DNA of 63,627 nucleotides, filler included, from Octopus bimaculoides (lineage: Eukaryota), in the NCBI RefSeq assembly GCF_001194135.2. It is 6 parts of 5 records of this genome, joined end to end, with 100 filler letters (N's around TTAATTAATTAA, not from the genome) between each part and the next. Parts side by side here need not be neighbours in the genome. Positions count along the whole stretch, not along the records: positions 29,764 to 41,138 come from NC_068982.1; 5 more parts are not named here. One strand, written 5' to 3'. This document shows positions 29,764 through 40,380 of the stretch, one piece after another (position 1 is the first letter of the stretch; each line of letters starts with the position of its first letter). The notes beneath the pieces were generated by a model. That model was not told where the DNA came from and made no database searches. It was given only the letters and a program-made list of their open reading frames with translations. A program made the position numbers and the translations under genes.

Positions 29764-29889
29764 TAGTTTCAGCTTAGAGCTGCGGCCATGCTGATGCACC
29801 GCCGTGTTGCTACACTGTTATTACAGGGAGCCTCTTACAATTTGTGGCACTTGGTGAAGAATGGGGTTTGATTTTTTATATATATATAT

Positions 29890-30285
29890 AGGTGAAGTAT
29901 ATTTGCCACTTAAATGTGACTGACCCCTAAGGGTGGATGTTACTGTTGCTTTTAGCCCCAGGAGAACATCTCCTCCAGCTGGCTATCGACACACATCTGC
30001 GTCCTGTCTGTATTTGCAAAGGGAAGTCATCCTTCCCATCTTGATCTGCGAAACGCATCGAAGGTCGGCGATTGTCGTACGCTGAGGACAGATAAATACC
30101 TAGAAACTCGAGTCCGTGCGTATCGCAGATCAAGATGGGAAGGATGACTTTCCTTTGCAAATACAGACAGGACGCAGATGTGTGTCAGTAGCCAGCTGGA
30201 GGAGATGTTCTCCTGGGGCTAAAAGTGACAGTAACATACACCCTTAGGCGGTCAGCCACATTTAAGTGGCAAAGATACTTCACCT
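29890..30285. mobile_element. Foldback (long inverted-repeat) element, arms ~168 bp, with a hammerhead motif in the spacer
   Basis: 29890-30057 is the reverse complement of 30117-30285, with about 9 substitutions and 1 indel by hand count. The left end abuts (TA)n. No ORF or clear TSD. Confidence 0.9.
30076..30120 (+). ncRNA. Type I hammerhead ribozyme motif (GUC site) in the loop of a foldback element
   Basis: Stem I CGTACG (30076-81)/CGTGCG (30115-20); core CTGAGGA (30082-88); stem II AGATA-AA-TACCT (4 of 5 pairs); GAAA (30103-06); palindromic stem III ACTCGAGT (30106-13); predicted cleavage after C30114. Confidence 0.75.
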
Positions 30286-30423
30286 TGTCGTACAGGTACT
30301 GTTAATACCTCGTTCGGAGATTTAACGTTGCTTATATATATATATAGATAGATATATATATATAGATATAGATCTATAAATACATATATATATACATACA
30401 TGCATATATACACACACACACAA

Positions 30424-30540
<117 letters not shown>

Positions 30541-32608
30541 TGTTGGTGCCTTCAAGTTTATCCCTCGATTTGCTAAGACTTATATCGATTAACCTGTATA
30601 TATTCACATTCTTAAACAGAAATCACGACAAAAACATCTCTGTATTATATACAAACATATAGATACTCCAACAATCTGGGAAACTTCTCCAACCATTTTT
30701 ACCACACCTAACTTTCATGTACACATCATATACAACAAACCATGTATCTCCCACTGATTATCAACACTAATCCCTTGTTTTATCTCTATAAACGTCTCCT
30801 AAGTATATCCCATAATTAGATTTTATCACTAAAAAAAGACCTTACAAATACTAAGCTCAAACATATTTTTTCACGCATGCGCATAATCGCATTACACTCA
30901 CCTACACAAACGTTGTCACCAACATAGATTTACTACTTTTACAATATTACTTTTACTTCGTCAGTTACCACTTATCTTTTGACCACACAGTATAAATGTC
31001 TCCATACGTTGAACTGATGATCTGTTATTTAATATAACTATATCTCATATTTCTAAGTTTTCTGTAGAGAAGATACTGCAAGAATTCTAATACAAACAAA
31101 AATTTATTAGATGTAATAGTTAGCTCGAAATAAATTGGAGCTTAATTCCTTTTCTTTCAAATCCTATATTTATATCAATATTTCATAGTGAGATACATAT
31201 TTACTTTTCACGTGTTTCTGAACTTTCTATTAACATTACGCAACGTCTGAAGACGAGTCCTTCTTGTTTAGTTATGTATCTTATAGTTTTCTAAGATGAT
31301 TTTCTATTTCCAGTGATATCAAAGAAAACTGAACAAATATCCATGAGCATCACTCTCCAGATTTAAACTGCATTAAGTGTATATATTTTACATTTTATTC
31401 GTTATAAAAATGTTCTCTTCCCATTCAAAAATCATAAATTAGGTTTGATGATAGTAAATTAGATTTCAGAATAGATTTGTGTAATGGGGAAACTACTTGA
31501 GTAAATTGAATGTAAGTTGGAATTGACTTATGAAACATATCTTCAAAAACTATTTTCAGAATGAAATACAATAATAATAATACCGTTTTAAATTTCAAAT
31601 TCCAATTTGAAATAAAAAGGTGTTTCGGACATATAAAAAAACATATTTATGTTATTATCTTTGTACTAAAACCGTTTTACTTATCCGTATTCAATTATGG
31701 CATGTAAGACATATAGAGTGTAAAAGGAATCCAGACAATAAGACCTACCTTACCCCCCCCATATATATATATATATATATGTATGGATCAAAACAGTTTG
31801 ATTCAAATTCGTTGATACTCTTGAATGTTTGTTAGTGAGATCGAAACATGTCTCGAACAATTATTATGAATAAACTAACTGGAAGTAACATAAATTTGAA
31901 ATTCAAAATGGCTGACGGCTAGTATCACGTTTTAAACTCAAGAGTACTAAAGAATTTGGATCAAACTGTCTTGATCTATACATGTAACTCTCAATAAACT
32001 GGTTGAGTGCCCTTCTTTCGTTTGTCCACTCACTCATGTATGTATATATATATATATATATATATNNNNNNNNNNNNNNNNNNNNNNNNNNNNNNNNNNN
32101 NNNNNNNNNNNNNNNNNNNNNNNNNNNNNNNNNNNNNNNNNNNNNNNNNNNNNNNNNNNNNNNNNNNNNNNNNNNNNNNNNNNNNNNNNNNNNNNNNNNN
32201 NNNNNNNNNNNNNNNNNNNNNNNNNNNNNNNNNNNNNNNNNNNNNNNNNNNNNNNNNNNNNNNNNNNNNNNNNNNNNNNNNNNNNNNNNNNNNNNNNNNN
32301 NNNNNNNNNNNNNNNNNNNNNNNNNNNNNNNNNNNNNNNNNNNNNNNNNNNNNNNNNNNNNNNNNNNNNNNNNNNNNNNNNNNNNNNNNNNNNNNNNNNN
32401 NNNNNNNNNNNNNNNNNNNNNNNNNNNNNNNNNNNNNNNNNNNNNNNNNNNNNNNNNNNNNNNNNNNNNNNNNNNNNNNNNNNNNNNNNNNNNNNNNNNN
32501 NNNNNNNNNNNNNNNNNNNNNNNNNNNNNNNNNNNNNNNNNNNNNNNNNNNNNNNNNNNNNNNNNNNNNNNNNNNNNNNNNNNNNNNNNNNNNNNNNNNN
32601 NNNNNNNN

Positions 32609-32651
<43 letters not shown>

Positions 32652-32694
32652 CACATATATATATATATATATATACATGTGTGTGTATGTATTT

Positions 32695-32895
32695 GTGTGT
32701 CTATGTGTATCCCCGCACCGTCGCTTGACAACTGTTGGTGTGTTTACGTCCCCGTAACCTATCGGTTTGGTAAAAGTGGTGATAGAATACGTACTAGGGT
32801 TACAAAGAATAAGTCTTGGGGTCGGTGTCTTCGATTGAAGGCAGTGGTCTAGTATGGCCACGGTCAAATGACTGAAACAATTAGACTAATAAAAG
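32695..32895 (+). mobile_element. SINE 3' body (family B)
   Basis: CGCTTGACAAC..GGTGTGTTTACGTCCCCGTAAC..GAATAAGTC.TGGGGTCG; reverse copy at 29370-29580, fragments at 50990-51080 (-) and 42367-42420 (+). Confidence 0.8.
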
Positions 32896-33005
32896 AATAT
32901 ATATGTACGTATATATACAAACATACATATATAGATATACATATATACATACATATATATAGATATACACATATACATATATATCTGTATATCTATCTAT
33001 CTATC

Positions 33006-33050
<45 letters not shown>

Positions 33051-33080
33051 NNNNNNNNNNGAGAGAGAGAGAGAGAGAGT

Positions 33081-33112
<32 letters not shown>

Positions 33113-33155
33113 CAGACAGAAAGAGATTGAGAGAGCAGAAATAGACAAACAAATT

Positions 33156-33219
<64 letters not shown>

Positions 33220-33697
33220 CATTCACAAGCGTGCATGTGCGCATATGATAGGCTAAAATGATCCTTAAGAGCCAGAAATATTTTAGCATCTGAGGAAGAA
33301 AAGCATCAATTTCACAGCTCGATCGTAATCTAATTACGTTCGACAATAAATACAATTCCATAAACACGTAATAAATATACGCAGTTAATAAATGTGAAAT
33401 AATTAAAATTGATTTAAAGGAATGATTATTACGAATCAAGAATACAACCAGCTCTTTTAGCCATGCACATAATCTCTATTCTTTAGTCTCTCTCTCCCTC
33501 TCCCACTTTTTCTAATGCTCTCTCTCTCCCGTTCTGTCTCCCCCTTTCTCTCTCTCCCTCTCTATGTATCTATATATAAAAATCATATATTAACAGAGGA
33601 AGTATATCATTAGTAAAATTTATTTTACCGTAAATATCTATATTCAACTACAATTGTTTCGCAGCTTACAACTATGCGCTAATAATTTTCTTTATCG

Positions 33698-33922: not shown

Positions 33923-34763
33923 NNNNNNNNNNNNNNNNNNNNNNNNNNNNNNNNNNNNNNNNNNNNNNNNNNNNNNNNNNNNNNNNNNNNNNNNNNNNNN
34001 NNNNNNNNNNNNNNNNNNNNNNNNNNNNNNNNNNNNNNNNNNNNNNNNNNNNNNNNNNNNNNNNNNNNNNNNNNNNNNNNNNNNNNNNNNNNNNNNNNNN
34101 NNNNNNNNNNNNNNNNNNNNNNNNNNNNNNNNNNNNNNNNNNNNNNNNNNNNNNNNNNNNNNNNNNNNNNNNNNNNNNNNNNNNNNNNNNNNNNNNNNNN
34201 NNNNNNNNNNNNNNNNNNNNNNNNNNNNNNNNNNNNNNNNNNNNNNNNNNNNNNNNNNNNNNNNNNNNNNNNNNNNNNNNNNNNNNNNNNNNNNNNNNNN
34301 NNNNNNNNNNNNNNNNNNNNNNNNNNNNNNNNNNNNNNNNNNNNNNNNNNNNNNNNNNNNNNNNNNNNNNNNNNNNNNNNNNNNNNNNNNNNNNNNNNNN
34401 NNNNNNNNNNNNNNNNNNNNNNNNNNNNNNNNNNNNNNNNNNNNNNNNNNNNNNNNNNNNNNNNNNNNNNNNNNNNNNNNNNNNNNNNNNNNNNNNNNNN
34501 NNNNNNNNNNNNNNNNNNNNNNNNNNNNNNNNNNNNNNNNNNNNNNNNNNNNNNNNNNNNNNNNNNNNNNNNNNNNNNNNNNNNNNNNNNNNNNNNNNNN
34601 NNNNNNNNNNNNNNNNNNNNNNNNNNNNNNNNNNNNNNNNNNNNNNNNNNNNNNNNNNNNNNNNNNNNNNNNNNNNNNNNNNNNNNNNNNNNNNNNNNNN
34701 NNNNNNNNNNNNNNNNNNNNNNNNNNNNNNNNNNNNNNNNNNNNNNNNNNNNNNNNNNNNNNN

Positions 34764-34826
<63 letters not shown>

Positions 34827-35409
34827 ATGTATATATATATATAAAGATATATATAGTACAAGTATATCAAACGGTAAACATATTAAAACAATTCTTTCGT
34901 TAATTAACACAAGAATCAATGGTACATGTTGTGACATAATCTGGTTATTAAACTGTATGAAGAAACTCCGTCTTACTAATATTTATTTGCCCCTTAATAC
35001 ACTTCAGAAACGTCTCTATTGCTAACAATATTATGTAATATATCAAAAAGTGGCAGTCTGGTATATTTATCATAACAAATATCTTTGTTTAAAGTAACAA
35101 TTTATGAACAGTATACAAGAGTCGGCGCCTTGTCGTTTCTATTGTCTAGTCAGATTTATCACAGATGACATAATAATTAATCATCCACGAATTTCTGAGG
35201 AAATTGTACTTCTGCGTTCCTATTAACTTGCCAATAGCCACTCATTGCATCGAAATATCGGTGGTTCTAAACAACAAATAGGAAGTGTTGCTTATTTAGC
35301 TATAGTTTAACACACTGATTATAAAGAGCAATATATACATTCACTTTTTCTATTTATTAATGTAAATTTACTTTTAATCGAAGCTGAGATTAATCAAGAG
35401 ATGACTGAC

Positions 35410-35463
<54 letters not shown>

Positions 35464-35973
35464 NNNNNNNNNNNNNNNNNNNNNNNNNNNNNNNNNNNNN
35501 NNNNNNNNNNNNNNNNNNNNNNNNNNNNNNNNNNNNNNNNNNNNNNNNNNNNNNNNNNNNNNNNNNNNNNNNNNNNNNNNNNNNNNNNNNNNNNNNNNNN
35601 NNNNNNNNNNNNNNNNNNNNNNNNNNNNNNNNNNNNNNNNNNNNNNNNNNNNNNNNNNNNNNNNNNNNNNNNNNNNNNNNNNNNNNNNNNNNNNNNNNNN
35701 NNNNNNNNNNNNNNNNNNNNNNNNNNNNNNNNNNNNNNNNNNNNNNNNNNNNNNNNNNNNNNNNNNNNNNNNNNNNNNNNNNNNNNNNNNNNNNNNNNNN
35801 NNNNNNNNNNNNNNNNNNNNNNNNNNNNNNNNNNNNNNNNNNNNNNNNNNNNNNNNNNNNNNNNNNNNNNNNNNNNNNNNNNNNNNNNNNNNNNNNNNNN
35901 NNNNNNNNNNNNNNNNNNNNNNNNNNNNNNNNNNNNNNNNNNNNNNNNNNNNNNNNNNNNNNNNNNNNNNNNN

Positions 35974-36724: not shown

Positions 36725-36771
36725 CACTACTTGATATCCTGTTGCTTATATTGATTTTAAATACATATGAT

Positions 36772-36862
<91 letters not shown>

Positions 36863-37549
36863 AAGAGAAATATATCATATTCTTTTCCTGCAATGAGATG
36901 CAATAATCGGAAATGATAATGGGTCGTGTCCAGTTACTTTGGTATTTCATTAAACATTTGGCCGCATTATGTGCCTCTGTCAACTATTTTTAACCGATAT
37001 TTGAATTTATATGGTTTCTTCTTGCCGTCTTTTGTCGGTGTTTATAGAGATGCCGCTACTTTTTACTCCCACAACACTGTGGTTGATACATAATTTGTCT
37101 TAAACTCTCTCTTCCGTTTGAACATGTTACTGTCTACATTTCTGTATTATTCTCGCTCTTTGTACTGTATTAATTTCCTTTTTATTCTTAGCTAGATCTT
37201 AGTAACATCATTTGAGTTCGGAATCTACTTCTAGATTATTGCCAAGCTCCTGAATTCCCTTAGTATTTCCTCTCCTTAAATATTCCTCATATATTATTCA
37301 TATTTCCGTTTCTGTAGTTCGCTTTGACTTTTGTTGGTCTTCTTATGTTTGATCTTGTTGCTTTTTGCAAGTTTGTTTCCTCACTGCTTATATCTATTTT
37401 CTCTATTTTGTTTGTTACCCATGTTTTCATAGGAGATAATCTATTTTGATATCTGATAATTCTATTATTACGTTTTTTGCCTCGCTTGCAACAATATATC
37501 TTATGTTAACATGTCCGTTCAGATTCAACGTTATATTCAAATAAGTGTT

Positions 37550-38269: not shown

Positions 38270-38767
38270 TTTCTTCTTCTTTCTTCTTCATCATATTCTT
38301 ATAACCCTCCTCCTCCTCCTCCTTCTTCTTCCTCTTCCCCTTCTTTCACTTCCTCTTCCCCTTCTTTCACTTCATCTTCTTTTTCTTTCTCTTCCTCTTC
38401 TTTTTCTTCTGCTGTTTCTCCTGTTCCTATTTTTGTTCTTCTGTATCTTCCTCTTCCGCTTCTTCTTCCTTTTTTCTTCGTCTTCCTCTTTTTCCTCTTC
38501 CTTTTCTTCCTCTACTTTTTCTTCTTCTTCTTCTTCTTCTTCTTCTACTTCTTCTTCTTCTTCTTATTATTATTATTATTATTAATATTATTATTATGAT
38601 TATTATTACTATTATTATTATCATCATCCTACTCCTTATTATCATCATCATTATTATTTTTATCATTATTATTATGATATTCGAGTAATTCGACTTACTC
38701 CTCCCCCGATATTGCTGGCCTTGTGCCGCAAGTTGAAATCATTATTGTTACTATCAAGTAGTAGTCA

Positions 38768-38816
<49 letters not shown>

Positions 38817-38821
38817 TGTTG

Positions 38822-38853
<32 letters not shown>

Positions 38854-38860: not shown

Positions 38861-39061
38861 TTTTTAATTGTATTCATTTTGTTACTAAGCCGACCAGCAT
38901 CCTCTCAGGTTTATGTGAAATTTCTGCCCTTTTAAGACAAATTTTAATGTCCTTTTTTTACAAAGGTTACATATTTTTTTTAAATGACTTCACCAATTCA
39001 GTGTCCGGCAGTCAATACATTTCCGATTTCCTACTACTTCCCTTTAACAGGGAATGCATTT

Positions 39062-39160
39062 AACAACAACAATGACAACAACAACAATGACAACAACAAC
39101 AATGACAACAACAACAATGACAACAACAACAATGACAACACCAACAATGACAACAACAGC
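39062..39160. repeat. 15-bp higher-order trinucleotide repeat (AACAACAACAATGAC) x ~6.5
   Basis: Direct reading; one AAC>ACC variant. Confidence 0.9.
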
Positions 39161-40380
39161 AATCAGCATTAAAGTAACAACAATGGGCACGGCAGTCAGA
39201 AACAAGAAAACACAAATTGTCGATTCAACACACCTTGAACTTCCAGGTCCACTACTGCTACCACTATTTGTAGCAACACAAATAAATAAAAACATGACAC
39301 GACAATTAACAAACTCCTCTAGCCGTGCTAGGGGTGGAAGTAATTAAATTAACATCTCAAGAATTAAGAAATGCAAAAAGAAAGAGAGAGAGAGAGAGAG
39401 AAGACATACCGCACGACAAAGCTTTGCGCAAAACTGATTTTAACAGCTATAATACCGGTCGATTTTAGTGGCTACGTAATGAGAAAACAACCGGTAGCTA
39501 ATAGTCTGTACTGCGAGCCACTGTTGGATATGATCGCAACTGTTTTTGGTGCTTTCTGCTGCACCTGGCAGAAAAACTAGAACATTCCTTGTTAGACGAG
39601 CCAGACGTTATTGTCACTGTTGAAAAACCATCGGGAGACAGTAAATATACATGATAACTTTCGGTAGTGTAGTCTCCTAAAGGTAGATCAAATGGTTTTC
39701 AAAATGGTGTCGGTCAAGACGCTATCACTTGTTGGACATGCGCAGACCTGTGCGAAAACCGGTGAATCCTGTCTTCTCAACATTCACATCGTGCAACACA
39801 GTAGAATACGTCGTAAATATATGACACTTAGAGAAGATGATGACAAGTTTATATCCAGAACACCAGTTGGAGAAAAATTAGGATTGTAGGTAGAATGTCC
39901 AATCTCACACAGTAATGGTCTCATACATAAACCGTTATCTTTATTGTATTGGTGTTGAGCTACCAACTGACGGCCGTGCCTTGTCCCAAGAAACACGTGA
40001 CAATATTGGTGCGCTTACTCTTTCAATTCTTGTAGAAAGAAGCGTTCTATTATTCAGGAACTGCTGTTTACTGCCCAGATCTCCATATTGGTCCACGGAT
40101 ACCGTAGCTAACAGTACACGTGCATACGGTGAGGCATGTACACCCACAGGAATTGCTGGATAAACAAGATTGTGAACGTATATGGTCACATTTCCTGCAA
40201 CACTTTTTTTCTACACCTTATCGATAAGACCAATCTGCAGCCCATGGTTGAGCGAAAACCGAGGTTTGTCGTTGGGCAAGTGGGATCTTGCTAAAACCAC
40301 ATTGCATTCTACCAGCTGAACAATGTTGTTAGCGAGATATCAATTCTTGTATTTGAGAACCTGGTATGAGTGACATTGCA

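What the first reader, a model, noticed from the sequence alone, without database searches (positions are those of the whole stretch)
29890..30285. Foldback element with a hammerhead ribozyme at the tip of a ~168-bp hairpin
Seen: two ~168-bp inverted arms (~94% identical by hand count) enclose a ~59-nt spacer. The spacer is largely a type I hammerhead: stem I CGTACG/CGTGCG, CUGAGGA, short stem II, GAAA, palindromic stem III ACUCGAGU, GUC site at 30112-30114. Known: minimal type I hammerheads with palindromic stem III occur in Penelope-like elements and metazoan non-LTR retrozymes, usually in direct or tandem repeats, and work as dimers. Inference: a ribozyme capping a long rod would, once transcribed and cleaved, give a ~165-bp dsRNA with 2',3'-cyclic phosphate and 5'-OH ends. 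That could be a foldback retrozyme or PLE-derived element, and a strong ADAR/Dicer substrate in a heavily editing lineage. The 3' strand of stem I (TGCG 30117-20) can instead pair with the left arm (ACGCA), suggesting an on/off conformational switch. I do not know of a described family with this architecture.
Basis: partly seen in the sequence, partly recalled or inferred. Interest (0 to 1): 0.9.

Follow-up and report, generated by a model that had tools for sequence, protein, structure and literature searches.

The report
Head-to-head retroelement relic with hammerhead
A 441-bp insertion in a TA microsatellite holds two copies of one short retroelement joined head to head, one carrying a damaged hammerhead ribozyme; Penelope-like retrotransposons are known to leave this layout, so it is an ordinary relic, except that the inverted copy starts exactly at the ribozyme's predicted cut site.

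Summary
The arms 29890-30057 and 30117-30285 are 94.7% complementary. The spacer carries a type I hammerhead motif (30076-30120) with a complete catalytic core, a 6-bp helix I and a palindromic helix III.

The ribozyme is defective. Helix II has two A.C mismatches, including position 10.1/11.1. Rfam scores the motif 18.7 bits against a threshold of 34. The active fold costs +13 kcal/mol in the full transcript.

The element is larger than reported. It is a GC-rich 441-bp insertion (29891-30331) between two copies of TTATATATATATATA. Its layout is:
- an inverted copy;
- an 11-nt junction;
- a 213-nt forward unit carrying the hammerhead;
- a 47-nt tail that is a diverged repeat of the hammerhead region.

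An inverted 5'-truncated copy, a tail at one end only, a (TA)n target and a hammerhead are published hallmarks of Penelope-like element (PLE) insertions, whose non-autonomous derivatives are the animal retrozymes. With one 1-nt indel, the inverted copy begins exactly at C30115, the first base after the predicted cut. This suggests a self-cleaved RNA was its template.

No other copy could be retrieved, so family membership, conservation and activity remain untested. I read it as a relic of a known kind, not a new foldback class. Interest 0.3.

The parts
29876..29890 (.). Upstream copy of TTATATATATATATA: the (TA)n target and a possible target-site duplication
   Evidence: An exact 15-nt match to 30332-30346. 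It is uninformative on its own because it is microsatellite sequence.
29891..30060 (-). Inverted copy (the left arm). It is the reverse complement of 30115-30284 and has no tail
   Evidence: Identity is 94.7%. With a 1-nt indel (T30058) the match runs on to 30059-60/30115-16.
30061..30071 (.). 11-nt junction (AAGGTCGGCGA) of unknown origin between the two copies
   Evidence: It matches neither arm nor the tail.
30072..30284 (+). Forward 213-nt unit. It starts with TTGTCGTAC and contains the hammerhead and the right arm
   Evidence: The unit start is defined by where the tail homology begins. GC is 48% against 34% for the piece.
30076..30120 (+). Type I hammerhead motif. Helix I is 30076-81/30115-20, CUGAGGA 30082-88, the helix II/loop 2 region 30089-30102 (CAGA-UAAAUA-CCUA), GAAA 30103-06, helix III 30106-13. 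The predicted cut is after C30114
   Evidence: Rfam RF00163 at 18.7 bits, E = 0.02, helix II not paired. Descriptor statistics are and energies.
30115..30284 (+). Right arm: the body of the forward copy, from the first base after the predicted cut to the end of the unit
30285..30331 (+). 47-nt tail, present at this end only. It is a diverged partial repeat of the hammerhead region 30072-30120 and lacks GCUG of the CUGA box and the GAAA box
   Evidence: Global alignment matches 35 of 47 tail bases. Only 3 of 5000 shuffles and 1 of 1242 control windows score as high. The local test gave 18 of 2000. Rfam finds no hammerhead here.
30332..30346 (.). Downstream copy of TTATATATATATATA, which leads into a long TA/GATA/CA microsatellite

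Best explanation
The locus is one old insertion (29891-30331) of a short, non-coding, hammerhead-bearing retroelement of the Penelope-like element (PLE) or non-LTR-retrozyme kind, sitting in a (TA)n microsatellite.

Proposed mechanism (inferred):
1. A PLE endonuclease and reverse transcriptase cut both strands of the target.
2. Each DNA end primed reverse transcription on an RNA copy of the element, so two cDNAs grew towards each other and were joined head to head through an 11-nt junction.
3. The forward copy started at the distal reverse-transcription start site, so it carries the 47-nt tail. It ran through an uncut hammerhead and stopped about 43-54 nt upstream of the cut site.
4. The inverted copy started at the proximal site, so it has no tail. 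It ran to the 5' end of an RNA that the hammerhead had already cut, which is why it begins at C30115.

On this reading the 168-bp 'foldback' is a by-product of integration, not a designed hairpin.

The hammerhead in this copy is probably inactive, because helix II is broken and the hairpin sequesters helix I. If the locus is read through, it would simply give a long dsRNA hairpin.

Shown: the anatomy, the statistics, the energetics and the match to published PLE hallmarks.
Inferred: double-ended priming, cleavage-defined 5' end, and membership of the PLE kind.
For: Anatomy of the insertion:
- Two copies of the same ~170 nt lie in inverted orientation at 94.7% identity.
- The element is a 48% GC island in a 34% GC piece. 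It lies between identical TTATATATATATATA 15-mers inside a TA tract.
- The right arm is followed by a 47-nt tail, present at that end only. The tail is homologous to the element's own hammerhead region, starts exactly at the arm's outer edge with a 9-nt identity (TTGTCGTAC), and has p of about 0.001. So the arms are not terminal.

Hammerhead:
- The core, helix I and the palindromic helix III are all present, and this combination is very rare by chance.
- The helix II/loop 2 region has the same 4+6+4 layout as the Rfam consensus GUCC-CAAAUA-GGAC, and 5 of 6 loop bases are identical.
- The inverted copy's inner end falls at 30115 (with a 1-nt indel) or 30117 (ungapped). That is 0-2 nt from the predicted scissile bond 30114|30115. 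My estimate of the chance of this is about 2%.

Literature:
- PLE insertions show pseudo-LTRs, an inverted 5'-truncated copy forming an inverted repeat, a 30-40-bp tail often at one end only, (TA)n and other microsatellite targets that hide target-site duplications, and hammerheads near the 3' end (PMC8557442).
- A purified PLE protein cleaves and extends both target strands and starts reverse transcription at two sites whose spacing is the tail (PMC11167929).
- Most PLE hammerheads occur as single, truncated copies, some of them 100-700 bp apart on opposite strands (PMC4209133).
- Animal retrozymes have 150-450-bp units with canonical type I hammerheads and are argued to derive from PLE pseudo-LTRs (PMC7229834; bioRxiv 10.64898/2026.07.22.740005).
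Against: - There is no reverse transcriptase or GIY-YIG coding remnant in the 11 kb (Pfam on 20 ORF pieces).
- No second copy was found anywhere that I could search, so nothing shows this is a repeat family at all.
- The tail is 47 nt, not 30-40. It shares only about 64-74% identity with the hammerhead region while the arms are 95% alike, which a simple tandem or circular template does not explain.
- The hammerhead is of the canonical type (4-bp helix II layout, with a helix III), not the minimal type usual in metazoan PLE pseudo-LTRs.
- Helix II is broken, which sits badly with the claim that the same ribozyme cut the template, unless the source copy was intact.
- The match that brings the boundary to 30115 rests on 2 nt after a gap.
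- The target-site duplication is microsatellite sequence and proves little.
- PAc experiments found no need for hammerhead cleavage and no reads ending at the cut site.
Confidence: 0.55

Rival explanations
1. This is a dedicated foldback retrozyme family in which a working (dimeric) hammerhead caps a long rod. After transcription and self-cleavage it releases a ~165-bp dsRNA with 2',3'-cyclic phosphate and 5'-OH ends, and activity is gated by a helix I versus arm switch.
For: - The core, helix I and palindromic helix III are intact.
- The cut site lies exactly at the base of the rod.
- The A-X-A'-X' layout, with a second hammerhead-like remnant after the right arm, could be read as a two-loop rod.
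Against: - Helix II lacks the conserved 10.1-11.1 pair, and the score is far below the Rfam threshold.
- The active fold costs +13 kcal/mol in the full RNA, with pair probabilities of about 1e-5. It never exceeds 0.024 in nascent transcripts.
- There is only one hammerhead on the strand, so no cis dimer can form.
- Arm mismatches show no bias towards preserving pairing.
- The same layout is explained by known PLE integration products.
- There is no evidence of other copies or of transcription.
Confidence: 0.1
2. A miniature inverted-repeat or foldback DNA transposon with very long terminal inverted repeats. The loop happens to contain, or once captured, a hammerhead-like sequence.
For: - The arms are long and near-perfect with a short loop.
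- The composition is foreign to the surroundings.
- The insertion lies in TA-rich DNA, a common target of Tc1/mariner-type MITEs.
Against: - The bases directly flanking the arms show no matching TA or other short target-site duplication (left ...TATATA|AGGTG, right CACCT|TGTCG).
- The right arm is followed by a tail homologous to internal sequence before the duplicated TA 15-mer, so the arms are not terminal.
- The hammerhead core plus helices I and III is very unlikely by chance, and its cut site coincides with the arm boundary.
- There is no other copy in the piece.
Confidence: 0.15
3. A local inverted duplication, either from a replication template switch or from a short-read assembly artefact, in a gap-ridden scaffold. 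The hammerhead-like motif would be coincidental.
For: - The scaffold has four N gaps next to microsatellites.
- PLE-type inverted or tandem structures and palindromes are known to trouble short-read assemblies (PMC8557442).
- Two dinucleotide swaps between the arms, at 29947-48 and 29986-87, resemble template-switch mutations.
Against: - The arms differ at 9 substitutions and 2 indels, which is not what collapsing or mirroring one sequence gives.
- The GC island, the flanking duplicated 15-mer and the tail point to an insertion event.
- The joint chance of the motif and the boundary coincidence is very low.
Confidence: 0.08

Closest known systems
Penelope-like element (PLE) insertions: pseudo-LTR with hammerhead, inverted 5'-truncated copy and one-sided tail
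   Same: - An inverted-repeat structure made of two copies of the same element.
- A tail at one end only.
- Insertion into (TA)n, which obscures any target-site duplication.
- A type I hammerhead with a palindromic helix III.
- Mostly solitary, truncated copies.
   Different: - There is no RT/GIY-YIG ORF within 11 kb.
- The tail is 47 nt, not 30-40.
- The hammerhead has the canonical 4+6+4 helix II layout and a helix III, whereas the minimal PLE type has a long helix II.
- Sequence homology to any catalogued PLE could not be tested.
Metazoan non-LTR retrozymes: tandem 150-450-bp units with canonical type I hammerheads, expressed as circRNAs
   Same: - The unit is 213 nt and non-coding.
- The hammerhead architecture is the canonical type I: a 6-bp helix I, a 4-bp-layout helix II with a CAAAUA-like loop, and a 2-bp helix III with a palindromic tetraloop.
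- Solo monomers are known.
- These elements are proposed to be PLE derivatives.
   Different: - This is not a tandem array: there is one complete and one degenerate partial hammerhead.
- The unit alone is not unusually self-paired (z = -0.7 to -1.6).
- GC is 48%, not below 45%.
- An inverted partial unit is attached.
L1 twin priming (inversion with 5' truncation during target-primed reverse transcription)
   Same: The second target DNA end also primes reverse transcription, which gives head-to-head cDNA segments joined internally. This rests on my own knowledge of the L1 literature, not on a tool result.
   Different: Twin priming copies different parts of one RNA, so the two segments do not duplicate each other. 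Here both arms are the same 170 nt, which implies two templates or two passes.
MITEs and foldback DNA transposons
   Same: Long inverted arms, a short loop, small size and no coding capacity.
   Different: The arms are not terminal because a tail follows the right arm. No short target-site duplication lies at the arm ends. A ribozyme motif sits with its cut site at the arm boundary.

Membership tests
Hammerhead ribozyme, type I (Rfam RF00163) | Conserved core: C3 U4 G5 A6 N7 G8 A9, G12 A13 A14, A15.1-U16.1, H17 | tested here: met
   CUGAGGA 30082-88, GAAA 30103-06, A30106-U30113 and C30114.
Hammerhead ribozyme, type I (Rfam RF00163) | Open helix I that closes the three-way junction | tested here: met
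   Six pairs, 30076-81/30115-20, including one G.U.
Hammerhead ribozyme, type I (Rfam RF00163) | Helix II with the conserved G10.1-C11.1 pair | tested here: not met
   C30089.A30102 and A30092.C30099 are mismatches, and only A-U and G-C pairs lie between them. Rfam flags all four pairs. The pair is described as 'highly conserved' in PMC4209133.
Hammerhead ribozyme, type I (Rfam RF00163) | Short helix III with a palindromic loop (dimer-competent), as in metazoan type I motifs | tested here: met
   ACUCGAGU at 30106-13 gives 2 bp plus a UCGA loop, or 8 bp in a dimer.
Hammerhead ribozyme, type I (Rfam RF00163) | Reaches the family's curated Rfam score | tested here: not met
   18.7 bits against a gathering score of 34. 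The hit is absent from the 11-kb search.
Hammerhead ribozyme, type I (Rfam RF00163) | The active fold is energetically accessible | tested here: not met
   The hammerhead fold is -1.5 against an MFE of -12.2 kcal/mol in a 53-mer. It costs +13 kcal/mol in the full element, and helix I pair probabilities are about 1e-5.
Hammerhead ribozyme, type I (Rfam RF00163) | Self-cleavage, and conservation with covariation across copies | not testable with these tools
   There is no bench assay. No other copy was found in any reachable collection.
Penelope-like element insertion | ORF with a telomerase-like reverse transcriptase and a GIY-YIG endonuclease | tested here: not met
   None of 20 stop-free pieces of at least 45 aa from the 11-kb piece hit RT or GIY-YIG Pfam families. 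The copy would have to be truncated or non-autonomous.
Penelope-like element insertion | An adjacent inverted 5'-truncated copy that forms an inverted repeat | tested here: met
   rc(29891-30060) corresponds to 30115-30284, while the forward copy extends further 5'. The feature is defined in PMC8557442.
Penelope-like element insertion | A 30-40-bp tail, often at one end only | tested here: met
   A 47-nt extension at 30285-30331 lies at the right end only and is related to internal sequence. It is somewhat longer than the quoted range.
Penelope-like element insertion | Microsatellite target, notably (TA)n | tested here: met
   The insertion is flanked on both sides by TTATATATATATATA within TA tracts.
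Penelope-like element insertion | Sequence homology to a catalogued PLE pseudo-LTR, or to copies next to PLE ORFs in the same genome | not testable with these tools
   No Repbase, Dfam or host genome is on hand.
Non-LTR retrozyme | Tandem repeats with a complete type I hammerhead in at least two consecutive units | tested here: not met
   There is one complete motif. The second (the tail) lacks the CUGA and GAAA boxes and gives no Rfam hit.
Non-LTR retrozyme | Unit of 150-450 bp, non-coding | tested here: met
   The unit 30072-30284 is 213 nt.
Non-LTR retrozyme | A highly self-paired monomer RNA | tested here: not met
   The unit folds no better than shuffles (z = -0.68 and -1.59). Only the composite with the inverted copy is a rod.
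MITE / foldback DNA transposon | Inverted repeats at the very termini, flanked by a short fixed target-site duplication | tested here: inconclusive
   No matching short duplication abuts the arms. The tail places the right boundary 47 nt beyond the arm. The microsatellite context prevents a firm call.

The most novel reading that the evidence does not exclude
The inner end of the inverted copy was set by hammerhead self-cleavage in vivo. On this reading the reverse transcriptase ran off the 5'-OH end of a ribozyme-cut RNA. Head-to-head insertions of this family would then be genomic footprints of ribozyme activity. They would show that cleaved RNAs are real templates for PLE or retrozyme integration, a role that is still unclear for endonuclease-bearing PLEs.

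A more remote variant: both helix II defects are A.C mismatches that A-to-I editing would convert to I-C pairs, giving an editing-dependent ribozyme. I give that variant about 0.03 on its own.
Probability: 0.3. Interest if true: 0.55.

Novelty: new member of a known kind. Interest (0 to 1): 0.3.

Why it matters
As it stands, this is one decayed insertion of a known kind of mobile element, so it mainly removes a false 'new architecture' claim.

Its one useful lead concerns what hammerheads do for Penelope-like elements and animal retrozymes. That role is still open: HHR function in EN+ PLEs is described as unclear (PMC8557442), and no cleaved ends were seen for PAc (PMC11167929).

Here an inverted copy begins 0-2 nt from the predicted cut. 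If a pile-up of 5' ends at the cut site is seen across the family's copies in the source genome, that would be cheap, purely genomic evidence that ribozyme-cut RNAs are reverse-transcribed and integrated.

Tried and rejected
Searches for other copies (all negative):
- Within the piece: the repeat finder and sensitive blastn found nothing.
- An 85-aa stop-free translation of the element against the 5.8-billion-protein set gave no candidate.
- Exact look-up of 8 ORFs of the piece found none in the collection.
- Arm 21-24-mers were absent from metagenome contigs, viral contigs and prokaryotic genome contigs.
- A 20-mer gave 4 metagenome hits, but these match only those 20-21 nt and are chance.

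Identifying the organism or nearby genes:
- No tRNAs were found.
- Pfam on 20 ORF pieces gave only two sub-threshold hits.

Ideas tested and dropped:
- That the 213-nt unit is a self-paired retrozyme-like rod: it is not.
- That the arm differences preserve RNA pairing: there is no bias.
- That the tail is a second hammerhead: Rfam finds none and both boxes are lost.
- The Rfam miRNA and snoRNA hits in the piece are low-complexity microsatellite matches far below threshold.

Other:
- One repeat finder failed on a mistyped reference.
- The supplements of PMC8557442, which hold PLE consensus sequences, are not held as text.

Full report

Yes. The repeat finder reports the inverted repeat as two blocks: 29926-30057/30117-30248 (132 nt, 95%) and 29890-29925/30250-30285 (36 nt, 94%), separated by 59 nt. 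A gapped alignment of the arms gives 161/170 identical positions (94.7%), with 9 substitutions and 2 internal indels. As RNA the 396 nt fold into one hairpin of -323 kcal/mol. The z-score is -34 and no shuffle comes close.

**2. Is the hammerhead more than chance?**

- In the 11-kb E-value search, Rfam reported no hammerhead at all, only low-complexity miRNA look-alikes in the microsatellites.
- In a 101-nt search with laxer filters, Hammerhead_1 (RF00163) matched 30076-30120 on the + strand. The score was 18.7 bits against a gathering score of 34, with E = 0.02, and all four helix II pairs were marked non-standard.
- I wrote a descriptor that ignores helix II: a 6-bp helix I with G.U allowed, CUGANGA, 4-30 nt, GAAA, a helix III of at least 3 bp, H17, flush with helix I. 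It found 0 hits in 100 Mb of random sequence and exactly this site in the piece.
- My analytic estimate is about 5e-9 per nt per strand, or about 1e-4 for the 11-kb piece.

So the motif is very probably hammerhead-derived, but it does not qualify as a family member by Rfam's own threshold.

**3. Anatomy and competence of the motif**

- The core (C3-A9, G12-A14, A15.1-U16.1, C17), the 6-bp helix I and the helix III (ACUCGAGU) are intact. Helix III reads as 2 bp plus the palindromic loop UCGA. This is the 'canonical' metazoan type I layout described by Cervera and de la Pena (PMC4209133).
- The 14 nt between A9 and G12 (CAGA-UAAAUA-CCUA) have the same 4+6+4 layout as the Rfam consensus GUCC-CAAAUA-GGAC, and 5 of 6 loop bases are identical.
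- The stem of helix II is broken by C30089.A30102 (position 10.1/11.1) and A30092.C30099. The G10.1-C11.1 pair is called 'highly conserved' for these ribozymes.
- In a 53-nt RNA the hammerhead fold is -1.5 kcal/mol, while the MFE is -12.2 kcal/mol. The MFE fold pairs GGAC 30086-89 with GUCC 30112-15 and so buries G8, A9 and the cut site.
- In the full element the hammerhead costs +13 kcal/mol, and helix I pairs have probabilities of about 1e-5.
- In nascent transcripts ending at 30121-30125 helix I never exceeds 0.024. Once about 10 nt of the right arm exist, the arm pairing is above 0.95.

This copy is probably inactive.

**4. The element is bigger than the foldback**

- The 47 nt after the right arm (30285-30331) start with TTGTCGTAC, the same 9-mer that starts the hammerhead region at 30072.
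- These 47 nt align with 30072-30120 along their whole length: 35 of 47 tail bases match, with GCUG of the CUGA box deleted and the GAAA box lost.
- Only 3 of 5000 shuffles and 1 of 1242 real control windows score as high. The local test gave 18 of 2000. Rfam sees no hammerhead in the tail.
- Beyond the tail comes TTATATATATATATA (30332-46), identical to the 15 nt immediately left of the left arm (29876-90).
- The enclosed 441 bp have 48% GC in a piece that averages 34%.

The layout is therefore:
1. the target (TA)n;
2. an inverted copy, rc(29891-30060);
3. an 11-nt junction;
4. a forward unit of 213 nt (30072-30284) with the hammerhead at its 5' end;
5. a tail, which is a diverged start of a second unit;
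6. the target (TA)n again.

The arms are not the termini.

**5. A boundary coincidence**

With one 1-nt indel (T30058) the arm homology continues through 30059-60/30115-16 and then stops. The inverted copy thus corresponds to 30115-30284. It runs from the first nucleotide after the predicted scissile bond (C30114|C30115) to the last nucleotide before the next TTGTCGTAC. Without the indel the boundary is 30117. Either way it lies 0-2 nt from the cut site. By my estimate a randomly placed boundary would do this about 2% of the time. The extension to 30115 rests on only 2 nt after a gap.

**6. What this matches in the literature**

- Craig et al. (PMC8557442) describe PLE insertions as partial tandems with pseudo-LTRs. 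[quoted passage not shown]
- The same paper reports a strong bias for microsatellites, (TA)n in Naiads, that hides target-site duplications, and hammerheads near the 3' end. It also notes that such structures trouble short-read assemblies.
- A purified PLE protein cleaves and extends both target strands. It starts reverse transcription at two internal sites whose spacing is the tail (PMC11167929).
- Most PLE hammerheads are solitary, in truncated copies. Some lie 100-700 bp apart on opposite strands (PMC4209133).
- Animal non-LTR retrozymes have 150-450-bp non-coding units with canonical type I hammerheads (PMC7229834). A 2026 preprint argues that they derive from PLE pseudo-LTRs and also occur as solo monomers.
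- PLEs are abundant in coleoid cephalopods. I could not verify that the window is from a cephalopod.

**7. Most likely mechanism**

What is shown is the anatomy. The steps below are inference.
1. A PLE enzyme cut both strands in the TA tract.
2. Each DNA end primed reverse transcription on an RNA of a short hammerhead-bearing element.
3. One cDNA began at the distal start site, so it carries the tail. It passed an uncut hammerhead and stopped or was joined 43-54 nt upstream of the cut site.
4. The other cDNA began at the proximal start site, so it has no tail. It ran off the 5'-OH end of an RNA already cut by the hammerhead.
5. The two cDNAs were joined head to head with 11 nt of filler.

The hairpin is therefore a scar of integration. 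If transcribed by read-through it would form long dsRNA, as any inverted repeat does. The arm differences (4 G.U, 2 A.C, 3 transversion mismatches on the + RNA) show no selection for pairing.

**8. What does not fit**

- The tail is only 64-74% like the hammerhead region while the arms are 95% alike. A tandem or circular template of identical units would give a near-identical tail. I have no good explanation for this.
- The hammerhead is of the canonical type, not the minimal PLE type.
- No RT or GIY-YIG remnant lies within 11 kb.
- The broken helix II has to be blamed on the source copy having been intact, or on later decay.
- PAc work found cleavage dispensable in vitro and no reads ending at the cut site.

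**9. Rivals**

- A MITE or foldback DNA transposon is disfavoured because the arms are not terminal and no short duplication abuts them. It cannot be excluded without genome copies.
- A local duplication or assembly artefact is disfavoured by the 5% arm divergence, the GC island and the tail.

**10. Limits**

No second copy could be retrieved from the piece, from protein space, or from metagenome, viral or prokaryotic contigs. Copy number, consensus, covariation and the organism are therefore untested. These are the decisive next steps.

**11. Verdict**

This is a new member, unnamed here, of a known kind: a PLE/retrozyme-type head-to-head insertion relic with a degraded type I hammerhead. It is not a new architecture. 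The cut-site coincidence is the only feature worth following up. Interest 0.3.

Noticed in passing
window 39443-39607, minus strand: A 55-aa stop-free piece gives a weak, sub-threshold Pfam CUT-domain hit (PF02376, E = 0.023, 15.2 bits against a cut-off of 24.4). It may be chance, or a decayed exon of a CUT-homeobox gene. The 39.3-40.3 kb region is the only part of the piece with long open frames on both strands.
   Followed up: no
window 39047-39181: A minisatellite of a 15-nt unit (AACAACAACAATGAC), about 7-8 copies at 91-100% identity. It is open in frame on both strands, giving (TTTTM)n and (VVVVI)n peptides.
   Followed up: no
window 32066-32608, 33051-33060, 33923-34763, 35464-35973: Four N gaps, each bordered by TA, CA or GA microsatellites. 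The scaffold is a gap-ridden draft assembly. The long 'inverted repeats' that the repeat finder lists there are N-against-N artefacts.
   Followed up: partly
window 29947-29948 vs 30226-30227, and 29986-29987 vs 30187-30188: Two of the arm differences are adjacent dinucleotide swaps: TG against CA, and TC against CT. Intra-palindrome template switching produces this kind of change, unlike independent point mutations.
   Followed up: no
window 30092 and 30102: Both helix II defects of the hammerhead are A.C mismatches in which a G, or an inosine, would restore pairing. With both changed in silico the hammerhead fold improves from -1.5 to -7.9 kcal/mol but is still not the MFE of -16.5. This is compatible with two G-to-A mutations. 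The idea of rescue by A-to-I editing is pure speculation.
   Followed up: partly
window 30332-30540, 32609-33260, 34764-34850, 36750-36870, 38270-38830: Very dense compound microsatellites: TA, GATA, CA, GA, CTT/ATT and TAG repeats. They produce many spurious sub-threshold Rfam miRNA hits (mir-297, mir-3149, mir-1277).
   Followed up: no
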